DNA of 56,274 bases, counting the filler, from Bipalium vagum (taxonomy: Eukaryota), in NCBI GenBank assembly GCA_037834085.1. It is 3 parts of 3 records of this genome, joined end to end, with 100 filler letters (N's around TTAATTAATTAA, not from the genome) between each part and the next. Parts side by side here need not be neighbours in the genome. Positions count along the whole stretch, not along the records: positions 17,832 to 40,061 come from JBBMKC010225001.1; 2 more parts are not named here. One strand, 5' to 3'. The notes below the pieces were generated by a model. It was given only the letters and a program-made list of their open reading frames with translations. It was not told where the DNA came from and made no database searches. Positions 3,703 to 40,061 of this stretch are shown one piece after another (the stretch's first letter is position 1; the number at the start of each line of letters is the position of its first letter). Both the position numbers and the translations under genes were made by a program.

Positions 3703-4898
3703 TTAATATTTGGTATATCCCGCAGCTACATCGATTTTTGCGGAAAGCCTTCGCTCCATAGAATCTAAAAGGCTGTACCGGTAATTCTTTTCTCCCATGA
3801 TAGTGGTCCACAAATCATGAAACTTGCTGAACAGAGCGTCAGATGTAGTTGGATTTATGAGTATATGATTAAGTTGGTGTTTCATGCGCCCCCATACATT
3901 TTCGATGGGGTCAGCATCGGGACTGAGAGCTGGCCACGACAAAAGAGGTACGTTATGATCATCGAACCAATTTCTTGTAAATTTGGCAGTATGGATTGGC
4001 GCATTGTTTTGCTGGTAGATTTCTATGTTGTTCATTTAATCGACGAGAAGAAGGAGTTTCTGCTCTAATAGCTCAAAATATTCTTCAAAATTAAGCTGCT
4101 GTTGAATTCTAACCAAATTACTGTAATCATTTCTAGAAAACGATCCTCACACCATGCAGTGACATGAACTACTGTTTGGAAGATGGGTAATAAACCGATC
4201 CTGCAATCTAGTGCTTTTTCTACGCCATACGAACTGTTATCTATTATTCATCTGGAACTTTGATTCTTTACTGAAGATGATTGCTGATTAGTTTGTTTGG
4301 TGATGCTATTGTGCTCACAACAAACGCGCTGCTTTGTGAGCCTTTGAAAGAAAGGGTTTGTGTGCTGGAGAAAAAGAAAGAAAATTCAATATCCTTCAAG
4401 CGGCGATTGATCGTTCCTTATGATACTTTTTGAATTGCAGAAAAGTTTGATGCTACTTGCCGAGTTAATTTGAACGGATGTTGTTCGACATATCTCGCAA
4501 TATGCCTGTCAAACCTACCTGTTGTTTTTCGCGGTCTCTTAAATTTGACACGGTTTCTTTCATGTCGCAGATCATTATTGATGTTTCACTGGCAATATTT
4601 ACTGACAGCAGACAGTGTCAAATCAAGAGTACTGGCTATCTGTTCATATGTCCATTCCACATGTTTGCGTAACGCATAAATCTGTCCTTAGTCAAAAAGC
4701 GTTAAATCGAAACCACGCAAATTTTAACGAATATACTGGAAATCAAACTAAACTAATATTCTAGCTGAATTATAAAGTAAAAAACACTTATATAGTTTAA
4801 CAAAATGAATTACAAAACTTTAAATTAGAATTGACAACTATAAATAATCTGATATAGTGTTGAATATTTTGTACTGGAAAATTTAATGTATCAGACTG
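3703..4898 (-). mobile_element. Tc1-family DNA transposon, degenerate transposase
   Basis: C-terminal ORF 4035-3703 has YQQNNAPIHTAK and WPALSPDADPIENVW and ends GYTKY. N-terminal HTH region with RPRKTT..DRHI near 4480-4720. A TA|CAGTCTGATAC terminus lies near 4898 on the minus strand. The other TIR was not found. Confidence 0.88.
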
Positions 4899-19969: not shown

Positions 19970-22900
19970 TCATCCTAATGATGATGACAATAAAGCCACA
20001 CCTCTCTTATAGAAATCGTAACTAGAATCAGTAGTACTGAAGAAAAGAGTAAACAAGACAGTGGAACGAGCAGCATTCAAATATATAGGCAAACACACTT
20101 TATCTTCACTGGAACTTGCTTCAAGAGCCTGTTGCTGCGACTTTTCCATTCTAAAAATTTTAAATGTTTAATTAAATTATTAAATGAATCTTCATAATTA
20201 AAGTTTGCTTTTTCTTTTTTATGGATTATTAATTGATAACAATATTAAATAGAAAATCGAAGACAACATAAAATCAATGAAATAATTCATTTTCATGTAT
20301 TACATCATTTTCAGATATTAGTCAAACGTTTTCTCCGGTAAGAAAATCAAAAAATAATTTAAGAGATATCTCAATGAACCACTGACCTTATCCATTTCAA
20401 TCGACAAACATCAATATCTTTATAAATCGATGTGCTCAACTTGAGTGTTCGAGAATTAACAATTTCACTGCCCATCAATCGCAGTCCTGTGATGAGACAT
20501 GTATTGTTATCAGCAGGGCCTTCTCCAAGTTCAACATCTAAAAACAACTCTTCTAGTGCCCATTTATTCGATTGGGCGACAGATTGTCTAGTAGCGGTAA
20601 TGTATGCTTCTGCCATAAACAATCCGCCAAGCCATACCTAAGAAAAATTAAGAAATCAATGAGAAAACATGATAGATGAAATCGTTTTTACTTTGATACT
20701 TCTCAGAGCACTGACACCACTAGAAGCGGCCGTTTGGCTGATGTGGATGAGTTGTTTGATTCGATCGGCGAAATCTTGAATCCACTGAATGACCGTCAGA
20801 CCCGGTGGAATTGCATATCTTATCCAGGTTTTTGGTATGATTCCCTTAGCCAAATCAGACATCATCGATCTATGGTGATTGGTGGGTTTCTTAATGCCTT
20901 GACAAACCTTTAAAACGAATTATTGATTTTTTTTCCAAAAAAAAATAATTAATTTCCATACTTCAGCAACGTCTTTTAAATCCCTTCTAACCGCGATCAA
21001 TAAACTGCTACCAGAATTGACTTCTCTTTCAAAACATCGATACATTGGATCTTTAATGTTATCAGATGTTCTCTGCAAAGACGTTACGGATAACGGTAAC
21101 ATTTTCAACCATGTCTGTGTACTCTGGTACAATTGACGCATCCATGCTGGACGCCCATCCCCAACTTCAATGGTTCTTTTGGATTTCGACTGACCGACAA
21201 CGATTTCCTCGTCATCCTCCAATGATTGTTGCATTTTCAAAATGTTTCCAATCATCGATTGACCTGAAGAGCACAGTGATAAAATTAATATATTAACCAA
21301 ATAAAAAAGTTTCTTAAATTGATGGAGAAATGTTTCACTACACATTATATTTTAGAATCGTCAAAAGATCAATCTCAATTGAAAATATCACGTCTTATAA
21401 ATTATCTAATTAAAAAACTTAAAGCAAAAAACGACTTTAGAGTTTAGGAAGGATATTTCTTCCTTTTGAATATAAAATAGATGACTCATTCCAAAAATAA
21501 AATAAGTTTATTTTTCAACTTCAAAAATAATTTCCTTTCATTAATTGATCATATTTTTTTTTAGAAATTATTTGTTTCTCGTAAACCATTTTTTATAAAC
21601 AAAGAAATTCATACTTTAAAGTAATATTTAAAATATTATATATTTAACTGAAAAAAATAAATTAACTTCTTTCAAATTTATTTTTGATTTTTCAAATAAT
21701 CAATAAACATATTTTTCTCATTGACTGGTATCAATGCTTATAAATAAATAAAATCGTTGACATCAAATTAAATAGTATATCTAGAATAACAAAAATAATT
21801 TACCACTACACTACATCATATATAAAATAATATTGATTATGTTTGACTTCACAAAAAAATCCTAAACAAAAAAGACCAATACCGAAAAATAAACCGATGG
21901 CTTTTTGGTAAGTCACAAACCTTTTTCCTGTTTTGCATCCTCTGCTGCTGCTTCGTCGGAAGCAACCAAACTTAAAATGTCGCGTTTATACTTTCCCGCT
22001 AACAAATGTAAGAAAAATCGATCGTTAAAGAAATAGTACAAAATATTAAAAAAAATCTTTACATACCCAAATTTGTTAGCAAAACTTTCTCTGCAGAATT
22101 CGGCAATCCGAGCCACGATGGAGTTTGAGAATCCGGTAATTTTTGAACCCATTCTAAAATGTCTGTGTATTTCGTCGATTCTGGAAAAGAGATATTCATT
22201 CCATCATCGGAATCAGCGACCAATGCAAAATCGTGATCGAAACATTTTTCAATAAACAAGAATCCCAAGAATGATTTGAGAAGTCTTTGATCGAATGCAT
22301 TATCGATTTTTCCTCCATAAATACAAGACCCTAGTAAAGTCTGAAGAGCGACCCATGGAATTTTTTCTGGCGGAAGATTGGTCCTGCCCATTGCAGCATT
22401 ATCGACCCAAGTATCGATTGTGTCCAGAGCACATTTGAAATCGCTTTCACCAAACTCATACTTTTTCGAATAACCTAGTGGCACATATCGCAAACGTTCC
22501 TGGACAATGGCATTCAACCAAGCCAAAAGGAAATAAAGGCGCGATCGCTCTAGTGGTTCCTTTGACATTCTCTGATTGGGAATTGAAGATAAAGTTCTAA
22601 GCAAATTGGCCTTAATTCCTGGTGGAGGTTCAAATACAAGAACTCTTCCAGCTCGTAATAGATTGACTGGCAATTTTGGATTGATTTCCATAGTCAAAAA
22701 CAAACGGAAGCTTGGATGTGGCTGCAACGAATGAATCTTCTTTTCCAATGAAACCAGCCATGATGTAGCCAGATGAACATTTTTCAACATCACCCATTTT
22801 CCAGATTTAGCAGCTGCATTAATTGCCTTCTCAGCTTGGCTGAAACCTTCGGCAGATCCAATAGCGATTCCTGTCAGCTGTCTGTTCAATTCGACAGCCA

Positions 22901-25900
22901 GGTCTTCTACCCTGCCGCTTGGATCATATCCTTGCACGGCACACAACAATATTGGTACAGACGCTGTCACTTCCTTTTCTACAATGCCTTCTAAATCCAA
23001 AGTTCCCCTAACAGATTCGGTAAATTTTTCACTAAGAACAGCAGAAATAAATTTCTGGGAACTAGCCAATAATCGATCTGGTCTGATGGCTTGAATTGTC
23101 AAGAGATTGTACATTCCCTTTGCAATTTTCAACAATCGATTGTCATTATAATTGTTGTTATCAGTGTATAATTCAGGAACGTTGCTCTAAAATTAAGATA
23201 AATTAATATATTGATTTTTTAAAATATATATATTTACTTCCGGAGTAACAGACACAATCCAGGTTTTAAATTCAGGCGTCGAAAGTATTTTCTCTTCAAC
23301 CTTGGAGAACACCTTCAATTTTTTCAATCGATAAACAGAATCAATTTGATCTTGGTGCAAATTTAAACCGAGACTTTCCAATTTACCGGAACCGGTCGAA
23401 ACCAAAGCAGCTTCTTGGCTGCGAAGAAAGTGTTGGAACTCATCTTCTAAAAATCCACTCGGAGTACTACCTTTCAAGAAAATTCTAGCCAAAATTGTCG
23501 CAAATGTTATTTGATCTTCATGAAGCATTCCTCTGGCTATTCTGTTGTAAGTTACTTGAAACAAATTTTTTGTGATTATGTTTAATCGTTGTTTACAATC
23601 ATCAACATCTTTCAACTCTGGATTATCAATCAATACAGATGAGAAAATGTCCAGCATCAATTGTAAAGAGTATTGATATAGAAAATGAATTTGATTCATG
23701 GCCTCCAGTGTGAAATAAATGTTGGAACAAGACTGTGCAAGTGGCACATATTGTGTAGACACATTTTCAACTTCTTTCATTACTATATCCGTTTCCTCGA
23801 CCTTTTTCGCTACATCTGCAGCTTCTTTTTTCAAAGTCTCCAGTCTGGCAATAATTTTATCATTTTCCAATAGATTACCTTGAGCCTCGTTCAATGATTG
23901 GAGCAAATCTTTTTCCAAATGTCTCAACTTCAACTGAAATTCACCTTGAATCTTTAACAGATCCGATCGCTTTTTATCGATATCTGGTCGTTCGATTTTC
24001 AAAACAGCATTTAAGCATTGGTTCTGGAGACTACTGCGTGTTACAGTAAAATTAACAAATGTGACTCGAGAACAAATGTCAGGAGCGAACTCAACAGATG
24101 GATCACGAGTTGATAAAAATATCGTGAATGTCGGTGATAAATCGATATCCTGATCACCAAGTGTAATTAGAGTTCTGCCTCCAGTTCGTCGAACTTCTCT
24201 GTTCAAAACAGGATTCAAGATCGGATCATACGATTCAACATCTTGCACAAGGAGTGGAGTTCCGAATCGCAAAGCTGATTCCAATGTTTTTCTGAAACTA
24301 TCATCGAGGAAAGATGTTTTCGTTATTTTCTTTCCTTTATATTCATTTAATAAGAATGTGGTCGCTTGACCACTTGGATCGATAATCAAAGGATATCTAT
24401 TGTATCGACGTAAAATTATTGCATTTTCCACACACAAATCGTCGGCAGGAAGTGAATTTGCTTGCCAGCGCAGCCTATCATCTGGATTTGATAAATATTC
24501 AACTCGTGCCAAATCAGATCGGAACAATATGTCAGCTTCAGATAAATGATGACACCACGTATTAAACAAACTGGTACGCATATGCTGATCAAAATATCCC
24601 CCATATGCCATAAAAGCACTAGACAACAAGCAATCCCCGTTAATGGTTGCCATTTGAGATTTAAATGTTTCCGATCCGCTGTCCCATCTTGTTCTTTCAG
24701 CACTAAGAGATTCTAATAAGGCCACTGATCTACCCACCTATGATAATAATCATTTATTTTTTCTTTATTGATTTATCGAGAGATTTTTATGTACCTTTCC
24801 TTCAACTGACGCTAAATCAGTTTTAATGGTTTGCGCTTGACTAATCAATGCTGCATATTCCTCGGTATATCTGGCAATACTTTTTTCCAGTTGGGCAATA
24901 AGTTCTTCTGTTTCTTGAGACTTCTTTCTATTTTGTTCAGCAGCTTCGCTTAGCTCAGTCAATTCATTCCTCAACGGTTCAACTCTTTTCAAAATATCAG
25001 CATAACTTATCTAACAAAAATACTTTTTATTTTCTATTTTCAATTTTTCTATAAAACGTTAACTTTTAATCTTTTATTGGTTTATTCAAGTTATATCTTA
25101 TTAATTTTTAACTAGTTTGATTCTTTATCGATTTCATAAAAAATAAATTATAACATAAAAACCTTTTAATATATTAATTTTAATACTGAGAATTAAAATA
25201 AAATTGTAATATACATATAATAACACTTTTAAAATTTTAATTTAAATAATATCTCAAAAATAATGTTTTATACTTAACATATACAATATCTTCACATTAA
25301 AAGAACAAAACAAACTTGAGCTATAACCCATTTGACCATGGGACCACAAGCGTTACTGGCTTTGTTGACTTTATCGAAATTGAAATCTGGATTACTTAGA
25401 TATTTCTTTTTCATGGTTTCTCGAATAGAATCGCTACAATTAAGAGTTTTAATCAAAAATTTTCACAAATTGAACTTTATTTAAAAAATAATCATTTTAA
25501 AGACTCACGTAACGTCATCGGTATTGAAATTGAGAATGCTGGGAACAAAATTGTCTTTGATGATAACTTTAAGTATCGATTGCCAATCTGTAGTTTTTTC
25601 TCCCAACAACAAGCAAATAGATTCAACAGCCATTTTAACCATAACGGGCGGATTTTTCATGGCCTTGATTTCTTGAATGTCTTTCTTTCGAATATTTTGA
25701 ACGGCTATTAAATTTTAAATAATCATGAATTATGGGATATTCGTGAATCAATTCCTACCTTGTTTGGCTTCATTAACCGTTGGCTCAACCTGATCCAACT
25801 CTAATCGAACAGTCTTTTGTTTTTCGTTTACAAACTGTTCCTGTTTTGCCAATTCTTCCTTTAAAGTCTGTCCTGTAGCCTTCTTTTGTTCAGCTTCCTG

Positions 25901-37900: not shown

Positions 37901-39368
37901 ACTTGTTGACAGGCCATTATAATCTTTTCAAACTCATCATAAGGCATGTTCATCAAATGCATATTACTGATAACCTTAAATCAATAATTTAAAAATAAAA
38001 TTCATTCATATTCTCATCTTACTTTCATTAGCTGCGTTGTCAGATCTCGAGACAGGGCTTCCATCAATTTAATTATTCGATTAACAGGATATTTTGTTGC
38101 TCTCACTTTTTTCAAATGAGAAAATATTTGCTGTAGAGCCTCACTTATTTTATCTAACTGACTTGCTGATAACAAATCGTTTATTGGAAAATCTTTCATA
38201 AGTTGATTGTAGTCTTTTACAAGGACCTTCGCCGATGACAAAGCTTGAAAAAATAATTATGTAATAACCTATGCAATTATTAATTCAATTTTTTCTTACC
38301 GGTGTCTGTATCAAAACTGGTAGTAGCATGGAATCGCTTGGCCTGTTTGAGAATATTTAAAGTGAGAGTCACTTCTAACGATTCACGCTTTTCCTGTATC
38401 TTATCTAGACTGTGTTCGAGATTGATCCAAAATGATATTTCTTGAAGAGCCGTACCAGTACTTGGGTCTCTATTCAACTTAGTGACCTGCCAGAAACTAA
38501 AATTAAATCTGAGACAAATGTTAAAACCTTCTGAATTTCTTTAATCCAACGGTTAACACCAGATTGTAACTGGTTGAGAAATTGTGTATCATCAATTTTG
38601 TCTTCAAAATCAGAAACTTTTGCTTCCTTATTCTGTGCAAGTTTTTCTTGAATCACATGAGCTACATATGGATGTGGAACGAGAGTAATTTCTGGAATCT
38701 CAATATTTTGCTGCAAATGCAGCAAACCTATTTCTAATTCAGCCATCTTTTTTTCAACATTTGGAACCATTTTATCACTTGAGGAGCTTATACTGTTATT
38801 TCAAAACAATTATCAATAAAAATTTAAAAGTACCTGCTATCTTTTCCAATTTTTTTAATGTAAGATTTAAAGAACGGTAAGAGACCATAACAAACTAATG
38901 AATGCATAGACTCAAATGGTGGACCATCACAATAGCTGAGCACTTGCACTTGTGAACTTATCGTTTTATCAGCCTCTATAATTTGACCATTTTTAATAAA
39001 GATTGATGTCTGGCATTTGTTTGATTCAAAATGAACATCATTTGATATGTTAAAAAAATATTCAAACTCAGAACCTTCTTCCTCCTCTGCAAACTTAATT
39101 ATATTTTCAAAAATAAAATTTATTCAGTACCTCTTTTAGTCTGTTGAATACATAAAGTTGTAATCTGAGAATCATTAATAAACTTGATCAGATATTCTTC
39201 GTTATGTTGTTCTGTCAGAAATATTTCATAATCTTTTCTTGTTTTACTTTCTTCATCATTTAACATACATGGAAAAGCATACAAAGTTAAGTATTTTATA
39301 AACTTTGTAACACTTATAGTTGTTATTTCTTGATCACCTTGCTGCGTTACAATAACCGTGTCTGCCAT
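19970..39368 (-). CDS. DYNC1H1: Cytoplasmic dynein 1 heavy chain, complete spliced gene
   Basis: P-loops [24 protein letters not shown] and GVSGAGKT; tail motif [13 protein letters not shown]; C-terminus [14 protein letters not shown]. Approximate exons: 39368-39131, 39086-38834, 38792-38528, 38486-38300, 38243-38023, 37974-37754, 37002-36754, 36709-35542, 35498-35270, 33797-33588, 33537-33024, 32977-32741, 32687-32369, 32311-32069, 31902-31562, 30989-30698, 30650-26520, 26332-25759, 25704-25509, 25433-25316, 25010-24795, 24737-23238, 23186-22067, 21263-20962, 20907-20692, 20637-20387, 20150-19970. All junctions are GT-AG. Confidence 0.98.
21913..21998 (-). CDS. Candidate alternative exon of the dynein heavy chain (cassette 21998-21921, or terminal exon to the stop at 21913)
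   Basis: Acceptor TTTTCTTACATTTGTTAG, then 78 nt with 35 G/C in a very AT-rich intron, then donor AG|GTTTGT. Phase 1 to phase 1 and in frame with exon 23; encodes [26 protein letters not shown](GL*). Confidence 0.7.
35139..35197 (-). pseudogene. tRNA-Ala-like 3' fragment or tRNA-derived SINE head in dynein intron 9
   Basis: Minus strand reads GGGGTCAAAACATTCAATGCGCATGTGAAAGGTCCCGAGTTCAGATCCCGGTATCTC, resembling the anticodon-arm to T-arm/B-box part of eukaryotic tRNA-Ala. No intact acceptor stem or D arm. Confidence 0.55.
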
Positions 39369-39870
39369 TAAATAATTTCATAAATATAAATAAATGATCA
39401 GTAATTATAATACATATTAATGTATTTAAACAATTACCTTTTTACCTTCGATTAGCAAAATATTTTCTTTTAATTTTAAAAAGTATAAGAAAATACTAAA
39501 TTATTGAAATTTAATTTACTGTACTTAGAAAAATTTTAATATTTTTAAAAATTTATTAAAATTACTCAATATCGTAATTTATATATTTTATTTTAATGAA
39601 CTTAATAATATATTACTAATGTCAAAGTAATCCTGTTTTTATTATAATATGTAATAATAATATATATTAAAAATGCACTAATTTACCTTTAATATTTAAC
39701 AAATAAAATTTATCATTATAACATAAAATTAATGTTAATTCAAAGTTCAATACTATTAAATTGAAATCTTTATTCTACTTCATAAAATGCATTTGAATTT
39801 TAGAACTTCATAAATATTTATAATAACAATTTCGATAATTAATATTTAGTATCATTTGATGTATCTAGCC

Positions 39871-40061
39871 CAGTGGTTCTCAAACTGTGGGTCGCGACCC
39901 CATTAGGGGTCGCGACGGGTTTCGTTGGGGTCGCGGAACATTTTTTGAAAATGTAAAAAAAATTCAAATTAAACTTTAAAATGGTCAAAAATTAAATTGA
40001 ACAATGTTAATGTTAATTTTAAAATAATCAAAGTAATATTGAAAACCTACTAATAATTAGT
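39871..40061 (+). mobile_element. hAT (Buster/Charlie-type) element end, cut by the assembly gap
   Basis: Begins CAGTGGTTCTCAAACTGTGGGTCGCGACCCC with repeated GGGGTCGCG subterminal motifs. The flanking 8-mer ATCTAGCC fits the nnnTAnnn target pattern. Confidence 0.82.

What the first reader, a model, noticed from the sequence alone, without database searches (positions are those of the whole stretch)
21913..21998. Hidden dynein exon that could switch the motor between an animal-type and a cap-less (yeast-like) form
Seen in sequence: 68 nt after the exon 23 donor (…[11 protein letters not shown]|GTATGT, 22066) is a good acceptor (TTTGTTAG, 22000-21999) and a 78-nt island of 45% GC. It reads in frame as [26 protein letters not shown], followed by G|GT TTG TGA, which is both a donor and an in-frame GL-stop. 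The peptide aligns without gaps to the start of the normal next exon ([20 protein letters not shown]; DIL/NIL, S, acidic run), suggesting a duplicated helix exon. An AATAAA lies about 230 nt after the stop (21682-21677), which is weak evidence in such AT-rich DNA. Established: budding-yeast Dyn1 ends just after this post-AAA6 helix and lacks the C-terminal cap, and removing the cap from mammalian dynein motor constructs changes force and processivity. Inference: use as a terminal exon would replace the last four exons (~950 nt, ~316 aa) and give a naturally cap-less dynein-1 from the same gene. Alternatives are a frame-preserving 26-aa cassette (GTTTGT is a real donor at 25315 in this gene) or splicing to an internal AG before VGDGRPAW as a mutually exclusive swap. 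I do not know of a described equivalent but cannot search for one.
Basis: partly seen in the sequence, partly recalled or inferred. Interest (0 to 1): 0.82.

Follow-up and report, generated by a model that had tools for sequence, protein, structure and literature searches.

The report
Conserved hidden dynein mini-exon
A 78-base in-frame mini-exon hidden in an intron of the cytoplasmic dynein motor gene is kept, in the same intron, reading phase and codon register, in at least three distantly related species, so it is probably a real extra coding piece placed just before the hinge that holds the motor's regulatory cap, and not a switch that removes the cap.

Summary
On the minus strand, 68 nt after the donor of the AAA6 exon (22067|22066), lies a 78-nt stop-free island (21998-21921). 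It has an AG acceptor, a GTTTGT donor and 45% GC in a 21% GC intron, and it is single copy. The orthologous intron of three other species (L003, L008, L007) holds an island with the same phase (1-1) and a length divisible by three (81, 75, 66 nt). An automatic search picks exactly these islands as the best pair for window/L003/L008 (0-7 of 1000 shuffles reach the score). Identity by codon position is 0.47/0.62/0.31, a coding pattern. L007 is supported by position and phase only. The stop after the donor is not conserved (read-through of 2, 41, 8 and 46 codons). Two of the relatives have no poly(A) hexamer in the rest of the intron. The cap-less terminal-exon reading is therefore not supported. 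The peptide resembles the H1 helix plus acidic hinge that begins the next exon, in the same register (p about 0.001-0.01). No RNA data could be reached, so inclusion, skipping and regulation remain inferred. Tick, insect-like and fungus-like genes share the intron position but have no cassette.

The parts
22067..23186 (-). It encodes AAA6 and ends with the first base of a split Gly codon (phase 1).
   Evidence: It aligns to human DYNC1H1 3983-4336 at E about 1e-148. The acceptor at 23188-23187 and the in-frame start were read and match the relative L002.
21999..22066 (-). 68-nt mini-intron between the AAA6 exon and the cassette. It has a GTATGT donor, a pyrimidine-rich tract and a TTGTTAG acceptor.
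   Evidence: The pyrimidine fraction at positions -25 to -3 is 0.70. An intron of 54 nt is used elsewhere in this gene (20961-20908), and a TTGTTAG acceptor is used at about 25010.
21921..21998 (-). Candidate cassette exon of 78 nt, phase 1-1, 26 codons, stop-free. It encodes an amphipathic helix-like half followed by an acidic Ala/Glu/Asp/Lys half.
   Evidence: Counterparts lie at L003:1340-1420, L008:871-945 and L007:3195-3260.
21913..21920 (-). Donor GTTTGT. If the donor is not used, the frame reads Gly-Leu-stop (TGA at 21915-21913).
   Evidence: The stop is not conserved in the relatives.
21861..21912 (-). Pyrimidine/U-rich stretch just downstream of the weak donor. It is a candidate splicing-enhancer region (inference).
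   Evidence: The pyrimidine fraction of the 60 nt after the donor is 0.60 in the window and 0.70-0.72 in L003, L007 and L008. A weak tblastx match between L003 and L008 lies directly downstream of their cassettes.
21264..21920 (-). Downstream intron of 657 nt, very AT-rich. It contains AATAAA at 21682-21677.
   Evidence: The hexamer is expected by chance in DNA of about 20% GC.
20962..21263 (-). Next constitutive exon (H1 helix, acidic hinge and the start of the C-terminal cap), entered in phase 1.
   Evidence: It aligns to human 4339-4437. Its boundaries were read.

Best explanation
The island is a real, lineage-restricted coding exon of the cytoplasmic dynein-1 heavy chain gene. It is a frame-preserving cassette of 22-27 codons. 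It lies in the phase-1 intron that separates AAA6 from the H1 helix, the hinge and the C-terminal cap. When included, it adds an H1-like amphipathic helix and an acidic linker in front of the normal H1 and hinge. The cap is kept, but its tether to the ring is lengthened or altered. The cassette most likely arose by duplication of the 5' part of the next exon. Its weak donors and the pyrimidine-rich sequence after them suggest regulated, alternative inclusion. Shown here: the anatomy, the conservation and the coding-type substitution pattern. Inferred: that it is spliced in, that inclusion is alternative, and any effect on the motor.
For: (1) The anatomy is exact.
(2) The same intron holds a phase 1-1, stop-free AG..GT island of 81, 75 and 66 nt in L003, L008 and L007. 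Each begins with an Ala codon completed by the upstream G.
(3) In a search made without choosing by eye, the best-scoring pair of phase-compatible candidates between orthologous introns is the cassette pair for window-L003, window-L008 and L003-L008. The scores are 39-43 against a null of 23-29, and 0-7 of 1000 block shuffles reach them.
(4) Leave-one-out profiles rank the left-out cassette first among about 4750 six-frame pieces for the window, L003 and L008.
(5) Identity by codon position is 0.47/0.62/0.31, with G-rich first and A-rich second positions.
(6) GC is 0.45 against 0.21 in the surrounding intron.
(7) The island is single copy, with no Rfam or tRNA match.
(8) The cassette-bearing species group together (support 91/90) apart from the tick, insect-like, vertebrate-like and fungus-like rows. 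Those rows have the intron but no cassette, or have no intron.
(9) The peptide resembles H1 plus hinge in the same register.
(10) The donors lack the consensus at +3 to +5 in three of the four species and are followed by pyrimidine-rich sequence.
Against: There is no transcript evidence. The only run found holds DNA-like contigs, and laying it was uninformative. Peptide identity among the cassettes is low (about 8 of 26), and tblastx does not detect it. L007's candidate is not significant by sequence. The H1 profile does not retrieve the cassettes. No spliced protein among the 174 dynein hits contains the cassette, but none of those comes from this clade's RNA. Whether inclusion is alternative or constitutive cannot be told. 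Docking of the cassette peptide onto AAA5-AAA6 gave no verdict.
Confidence: 0.6

Rival explanations
1. One reading: the island is an alternative terminal exon. The donor is skipped, translation stops after Gly-Leu, the transcript is polyadenylated inside the intron, and a naturally cap-less, yeast-like dynein-1 results.
For: In the window a TGA follows two codons after the donor, and an AATAAA lies about 240 nt further on. Truncation after H1 gives a stronger and more processive rat motor (PMC4339881). The cassette is H1-like in register.
Against: The stop is not conserved: read-through is 41, 8 and 46 codons in L003, L007 and L008. L003 and L007 have no poly(A) hexamer in the rest of the intron. 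What is conserved is a length divisible by three and a GT donor, which matter only if the exon is spliced onward. AATAAA is expected by chance in DNA of about 20% GC.
Confidence: 0.06
2. The exon is constitutive in this clade. Every dynein-1 heavy chain of these animals then carries the extra helix-linker module, and there is no isoform switch.
For: The upstream mini-intron of 68 nt looks like the ordinary short introns of this gene. Frame and phase are kept in all four species.
Against: The donors are weaker than those of the neighbouring constitutive exons. The peptide and its length evolve much faster than the adjacent H1. Skipping it gives a perfectly colinear alignment to every other dynein-1.
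Confidence: 0.15
3. The island is not a used exon. It would be a decaying relic of a partial exon duplication, or a purine-rich intronic splicing element or decoy, whose open frame is fortuitous.
For: The peptide similarity is weak, and the sequence is purine-rich (0.53-0.70) like an enhancer element. There is no RNA evidence. L007 is not significant.
Against: Four of four islands keep phase 1-1, a length divisible by three, an open frame and AG/GT borders, across species whose neighbouring exon is only 46-62% identical. Third codon positions are at the random level while second positions are 62% identical. Block shuffles that keep local composition rarely reach the observed scores.
Confidence: 0.15
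4. The cassette is spliced to the internal AG just before the conserved Gly-Asp-Gly-Arg-Pro motif of the next exon. It would then replace H1 and the hinge in a mutually exclusive-like swap.
For: In the window an AG followed by TT lies in the right phase before that motif.
Against: L003 has no AG at that place. The cassette (78 nt) and the next exon (302 nt) are not of like length, as true mutually exclusive exons are (PMC3228551).
Confidence: 0.03

Closest known systems
H1 helix, hinge and CT-cap of cytoplasmic dynein-1 (Nicholas et al. 2015, PMC4339881)
   Same: The cassette sits exactly at the AAA6/H1 boundary (human G4336). Its layout, an amphipathic helix followed by an acidic linker, mirrors H1 plus hinge in the same register.
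   Different: It is an extra, fast-evolving copy placed before the normal H1 and found only in one animal lineage. No effect on the cap has been shown.
Naturally cap-less Saccharomyces Dyn1 and the rat MD-deltaCT construct
   Same: Both end right after H1. The window's read-through stop would give a similar end.
   Different: The stop is not conserved in the relatives, so a cap-less product is not the conserved function.
Mutually exclusive exon pair in Schistosoma mansoni cytoplasmic dynein heavy chain (Pillmann et al. 2011, PMC3228551)
   Same: Both are alternative coding exons that arose by exon duplication within a dynein-1 heavy chain gene.
   Different: [quoted passage not shown] Here a short partial copy lies before a much longer exon and can only be added, not exchanged.
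Conserved frame-preserving cassette exons with weak 5' splice sites and U-rich downstream enhancers (TIA-1/TIAR type; own knowledge)
   Same: Short length, a length divisible by three, a weak donor, a pyrimidine-rich stretch just downstream, and faster evolution than the flanking exons.
   Different: No binding factor and no regulated inclusion have been shown here.

Membership tests
Cytoplasmic dynein 1 heavy chain gene | The flanking exons are orthologous to DYNC1H1 AAA6 and the C-terminal domain | tested here: met
   E about 1e-148 to human 3983-4336 and 2e-24 to 4339-4437. There is a single dynein-1 locus in the genome; the other hits are about 30% identical.
Frame-preserving cassette exon | AG acceptor and GT donor, a length divisible by three, and no stop in the frame set by the upstream exon | tested here: met
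   78 nt in the window; 81, 75 and 66 nt in L003, L008 and L007.
Frame-preserving cassette exon | Conservation in the orthologous intron of other species beyond what chance would give | tested here: met
   Best-pair test: 0-7 of 1000 shuffles for three species pairs. Leave-one-out rank 1 for three species. Codon-position identity 0.47/0.62/0.31. L007 is supported by position and phase only.
Frame-preserving cassette exon | Transcripts both with and without the exon | not testable with these tools
   No RNA run was found. The reads tool left out the conserved contigs.
Alternative terminal exon / intronic polyadenylation isoform | A conserved in-frame stop and a poly(A) signal after the exon | tested here: not met
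   Read-through is 2, 41, 8 and 46 codons. There is no AATAAA or ATTAAA in the rest of the intron of L003 and L007.
Mutually exclusive exons from tandem exon duplication | Like length, same phases and clear homology between the two exons | tested here: not met
   78 nt against 302 nt. The entry phase is the same. Similarity is detectable only by a register test and not by a profile.
Dispersed repeat or transposon-derived exon | Many copies in the genome | tested here: not met
   One copy at E up to 10. A control repeat returns 40 or more copies.
Known non-coding RNA in an intron (snoRNA, miRNA, tRNA) | A match to an Rfam model or a tRNA fold | tested here: not met
   There is only a chance-level miRNA match outside the island, at E 3.5, and no tRNA.

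The most novel reading that the evidence does not exclude
Regulated inclusion of a second H1-like helix and acidic linker lets one animal lineage tune, by splicing, how tightly the C-terminal cap is held on the dynein ring. The motor's force and run length would then be set by isoform choice. The H1-like cassette could compete for the H1 groove and pay out the real H1 and hinge as extra tether.
Probability: 0.15. Interest if true: 0.8.

Novelty: new variant of a known kind. Interest (0 to 1): 0.55.

Why it matters
The C-terminal cap is the one large structural difference between weak mammalian-type and strong yeast-type dynein motors. Removing it changes force and processivity (PMC4339881). 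No natural isoform that alters this region is described in the papers I could search. A conserved extra exon exactly at the AAA6/H1/hinge junction would be a natural handle on cap tethering. It can be tested directly with RT-PCR and with single-molecule assays of the two isoforms. It also shows that gene models built by homology would skip a conserved coding exon in this lineage.

Tried and rejected
RNA evidence:
- The look-up of sequencing runs returned one DNA-like run only.
- Read laying placed only 20-30 nt low-complexity scraps, because conserved contigs are filtered out. This is not evidence either way.

Closest relative:
- The contig of the nearest relative (L002, 91% identical) ends 18 nt into the intron.

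Sequence searches:
- tblastx between the orthologous introns does not detect the cassettes.
- A profile of the H1-hinge start of the next exon does not retrieve the cassettes.
- No Rfam or tRNA match.

Naming the organism:
- A word search with a COX1 piece gave no named hits.
- Searching papers for the run accession numbers gave nothing.
- The only lead is that COX1 on L010 uses AAA at four conserved Asn sites and TGA for Trp. That is the flatworm/echinoderm mitochondrial code.

Docking:
- Complex prediction of the cassette peptide with the AAA5 and AAA6 exons gave no answer. It is reported here only.

Steps not run:
It was redone from references, after one time-out.
- The big representative search was not used. 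Leave-one-out scores of 8-17 bits for a 26-residue profile cannot reach significance against 1.8 billion proteins.
Exons were handled one by one.

Full report
WHAT IS THERE. The piece (17832-40061) carries a cytoplasmic dynein-1 heavy chain gene on the minus strand. A start-Met ORF lies at 39368 and the stop is near 19970. The exon at 23186-22067 aligns to human DYNC1H1 3983-4336, which is AAA6. It ends with the first base of a Gly codon, followed by GTATGT. The next homologous exon, 21263-20962, aligns to human 4339-4437. According to Nicholas et al. 2015 (PMC4339881), this stretch is the short H1 helix emerging from AAA6, a disordered hinge of about 20 aa, and the start of the 32 kDa C-terminal cap. 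Yeast dynein and the rat truncation (ending at 4348) stop after H1.

THE OBSERVATION. All stated elements are present at the stated places:
- the acceptor AG at 22000-21999 behind a pyrimidine-rich tract;
- 78 open bases at 21998-21921 in the frame imposed by the upstream phase-1 junction;
- the donor GTTTGT at 21920, and TGA at 21915-21913;
- AATAAA at 21682-21677.
GTTTGT donors and TTGTTAG acceptors are used elsewhere in this gene, and so are introns as short as 54 nt. The island has 45% GC against 21% for the rest of the intron. The other stretches of the piece that reach 36% GC in 78-nt windows coincide with exon-sized ORF blocks, apart from one dispersed repeat; not every block was checked as an exon. 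The island is single copy. The same tool finds 40 or more copies of a control GC island upstream of the gene. There is no Rfam or tRNA match.

RELATED SEQUENCES. Word searches with the two flanking exons, each given alone by reference, found genomic contigs of relatives. I fetched them with the look-up of encoding contigs.
- L003. The same phase-1 intron holds an 81-nt island at L003:1340-1420, with a strong acceptor and a GT donor, open in phase 1-1.
- L007. A 66-nt island lies at L007:3195-3260.
- L008. A 75-nt island lies at L008:871-945.
All four islands begin with an Ala codon completed by the upstream G. All have hydrophobic residues at positions 4, 8, 9 and 11 and end in an Ala/Glu/Asp/Lys-rich tail. 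The nearest relative (L002, 91% identical in the AAA6 exon) is uninformative, because its contig stops 18 nt into the intron. A tick (L004), an insect-like contig (L009) and two fungus-like contigs (L013, L014) have an intron at the same place and phase. These introns are only 64-120 nt long and hold no cassette. L005 and L006 have no intron there.
In a tree of the AAA6 region the cassette-bearing rows group together with support 91/90.
One mitochondrial COX1 copy of the assembly uses AAA at four conserved Asn sites and TGA for Trp, which points to a flatworm or echinoderm code. The assembly holds several divergent COX1 types, so this is a lead only. It holds one dynein-1 locus.

IS THE CONSERVATION MORE THAN CHANCE?
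- Best-pair test. To avoid choosing by eye, I listed every AG..GT, phase 1-1, stop-free candidate of 45-120 nt in each intron and took the best-scoring pair between introns. For window-L003, window-L008 and L003-L008 the winners are exactly the cassettes. The scores are 39, 43 and 42 against null means of 23-29. Only 0-7 of 1000 block shuffles that keep local composition reach them.
- Leave-one-out profiles. These rank the left-out cassette first among about 4750 six-frame pieces of all loci for the window (E 1.1), L003 (E 0.0019) and L008 (E 0.056).
- Codon positions. Nucleotide identity among these three is 0.47, 0.62 and 0.31 at positions 1, 2 and 3, with G-rich first and A-rich second positions. 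This is a coding pattern.
- L007. Its island is not significant by sequence. It rests on position, phase, splice sites and residue pattern only.
- tblastx does not see any of this, so the peptide is only loosely constrained.

WHICH MODEL?
- What is conserved. The features kept are those that matter only if the exon is spliced onward: a GT donor and a length divisible by three.
- The stop. It is not conserved. If the donor is ignored, the frames run for 2, 41, 8 and 46 codons.
- Poly(A) signals. L003 and L007 have no poly(A) hexamer in the rest of the intron.
- The swap. The internal AG that would allow a swap with H1 and the hinge is absent in L003.
The conserved function, if there is one, is therefore a frame-preserving insertion that keeps the cap. 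The cap-less reading remains possible as a species-specific by-product, but nothing here supports it.
- Splice signals. The donors depart from the consensus at +3 to +5 in three of the four species. They are followed by 60-72% pyrimidine. From general knowledge, this is typical of regulated cassette exons, so I infer alternative rather than constitutive use. No RNA data could be reached to test this.

ORIGIN AND LIKELY ACTION. In the natural register, counting from the phase-1 junction, the cassette columns match the H1-plus-hinge columns of the next exon better than column-permuted versions do. This holds for this clade and for 32 outgroup dyneins (p 0.0007-0.013). Register 0 is the best of the nine registers tried. 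A profile of H1 does not retrieve the cassettes, so the paralogy is suggestive and not proven. The simplest history is a partial duplication of the 5' end of the next exon together with its acceptor. Inclusion would place a second helix and acidic linker between AAA6 and H1. I infer that this lengthens or re-routes the tether of the cap. The extra helix could even occupy the H1 groove. A docking job on separate exon-encoded chains gave no verdict.

NOVELTY. The literature I could search describes a mutually exclusive exon pair in the middle of the Schistosoma mansoni dynein gene (PMC3228551) and the effects of removing the cap (PMC4339881). It describes no alternative exon at the AAA6/H1 junction. 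I class the finding as a new variant of a known kind of feature, a conserved cassette exon, at a mechanistically interesting site.

VERDICT.
- Real coding exon: about 0.75.
- Cassette that keeps the cap and is probably alternative: 0.6.
- Constitutive in this clade: 0.15.
- Non-functional relic or splicing element: 0.15.
- Cap-less terminal exon: 0.06.
- Swap through the internal acceptor: 0.03.

Noticed in passing
window 39860-39945 (minus strand), just upstream of the dynein start ORF at 39368: A GC-rich (60%) island with an internal palindrome. It is a dispersed repeat with at least 40 scored copies in the genome, many at contig ends. It may be a MITE- or SINE-like element.
   Followed up: partly
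G000 contigs C253947 (L010), C246471 (L011), C253320 (L012) and about 20 further places: The assembly holds at least three divergent intact-looking COX1 genes (68-78% aa identity) and many fragments with mixed stops. L010 uses AAA at conserved Asn sites and TGA for Trp (flatworm/echinoderm code). The sample may be mixed, or rich in nuclear mitochondrial copies.
   Followed up: partly
L008:1169-3823 (minus strand), inside the intron downstream of the cassette: Three called ORFs of 616, 211 and 33 aa without Pfam hits sit on the opposite strand inside the dynein intron. Short tandem repeats lie at about L008:261-611. This may be an inserted mobile element.
   Followed up: no
window 22067/22066; L004:8637; L009:4369; L013:about 7089; L014:about 1047: The phase-1 intron after the Gly that ends AAA6 sits at the same place in this animal, a tick, an insect-like contig and two fungus-like contigs. 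It is therefore an old intron position.
   Followed up: partly
window about 21160 (minus strand), inside exon 24: An AG followed by TT, in phase 1, lies just before the conserved Gly-Asp-Gly-Arg-Pro motif. It could serve as an internal acceptor in this species only.
   Followed up: partly
L003:about 1295-1300: A TGCATG hexamer (an Rbfox-type motif) lies about 40 nt upstream of the L003 cassette acceptor. It is not seen in the window's 68-nt mini-intron.
   Followed up: no
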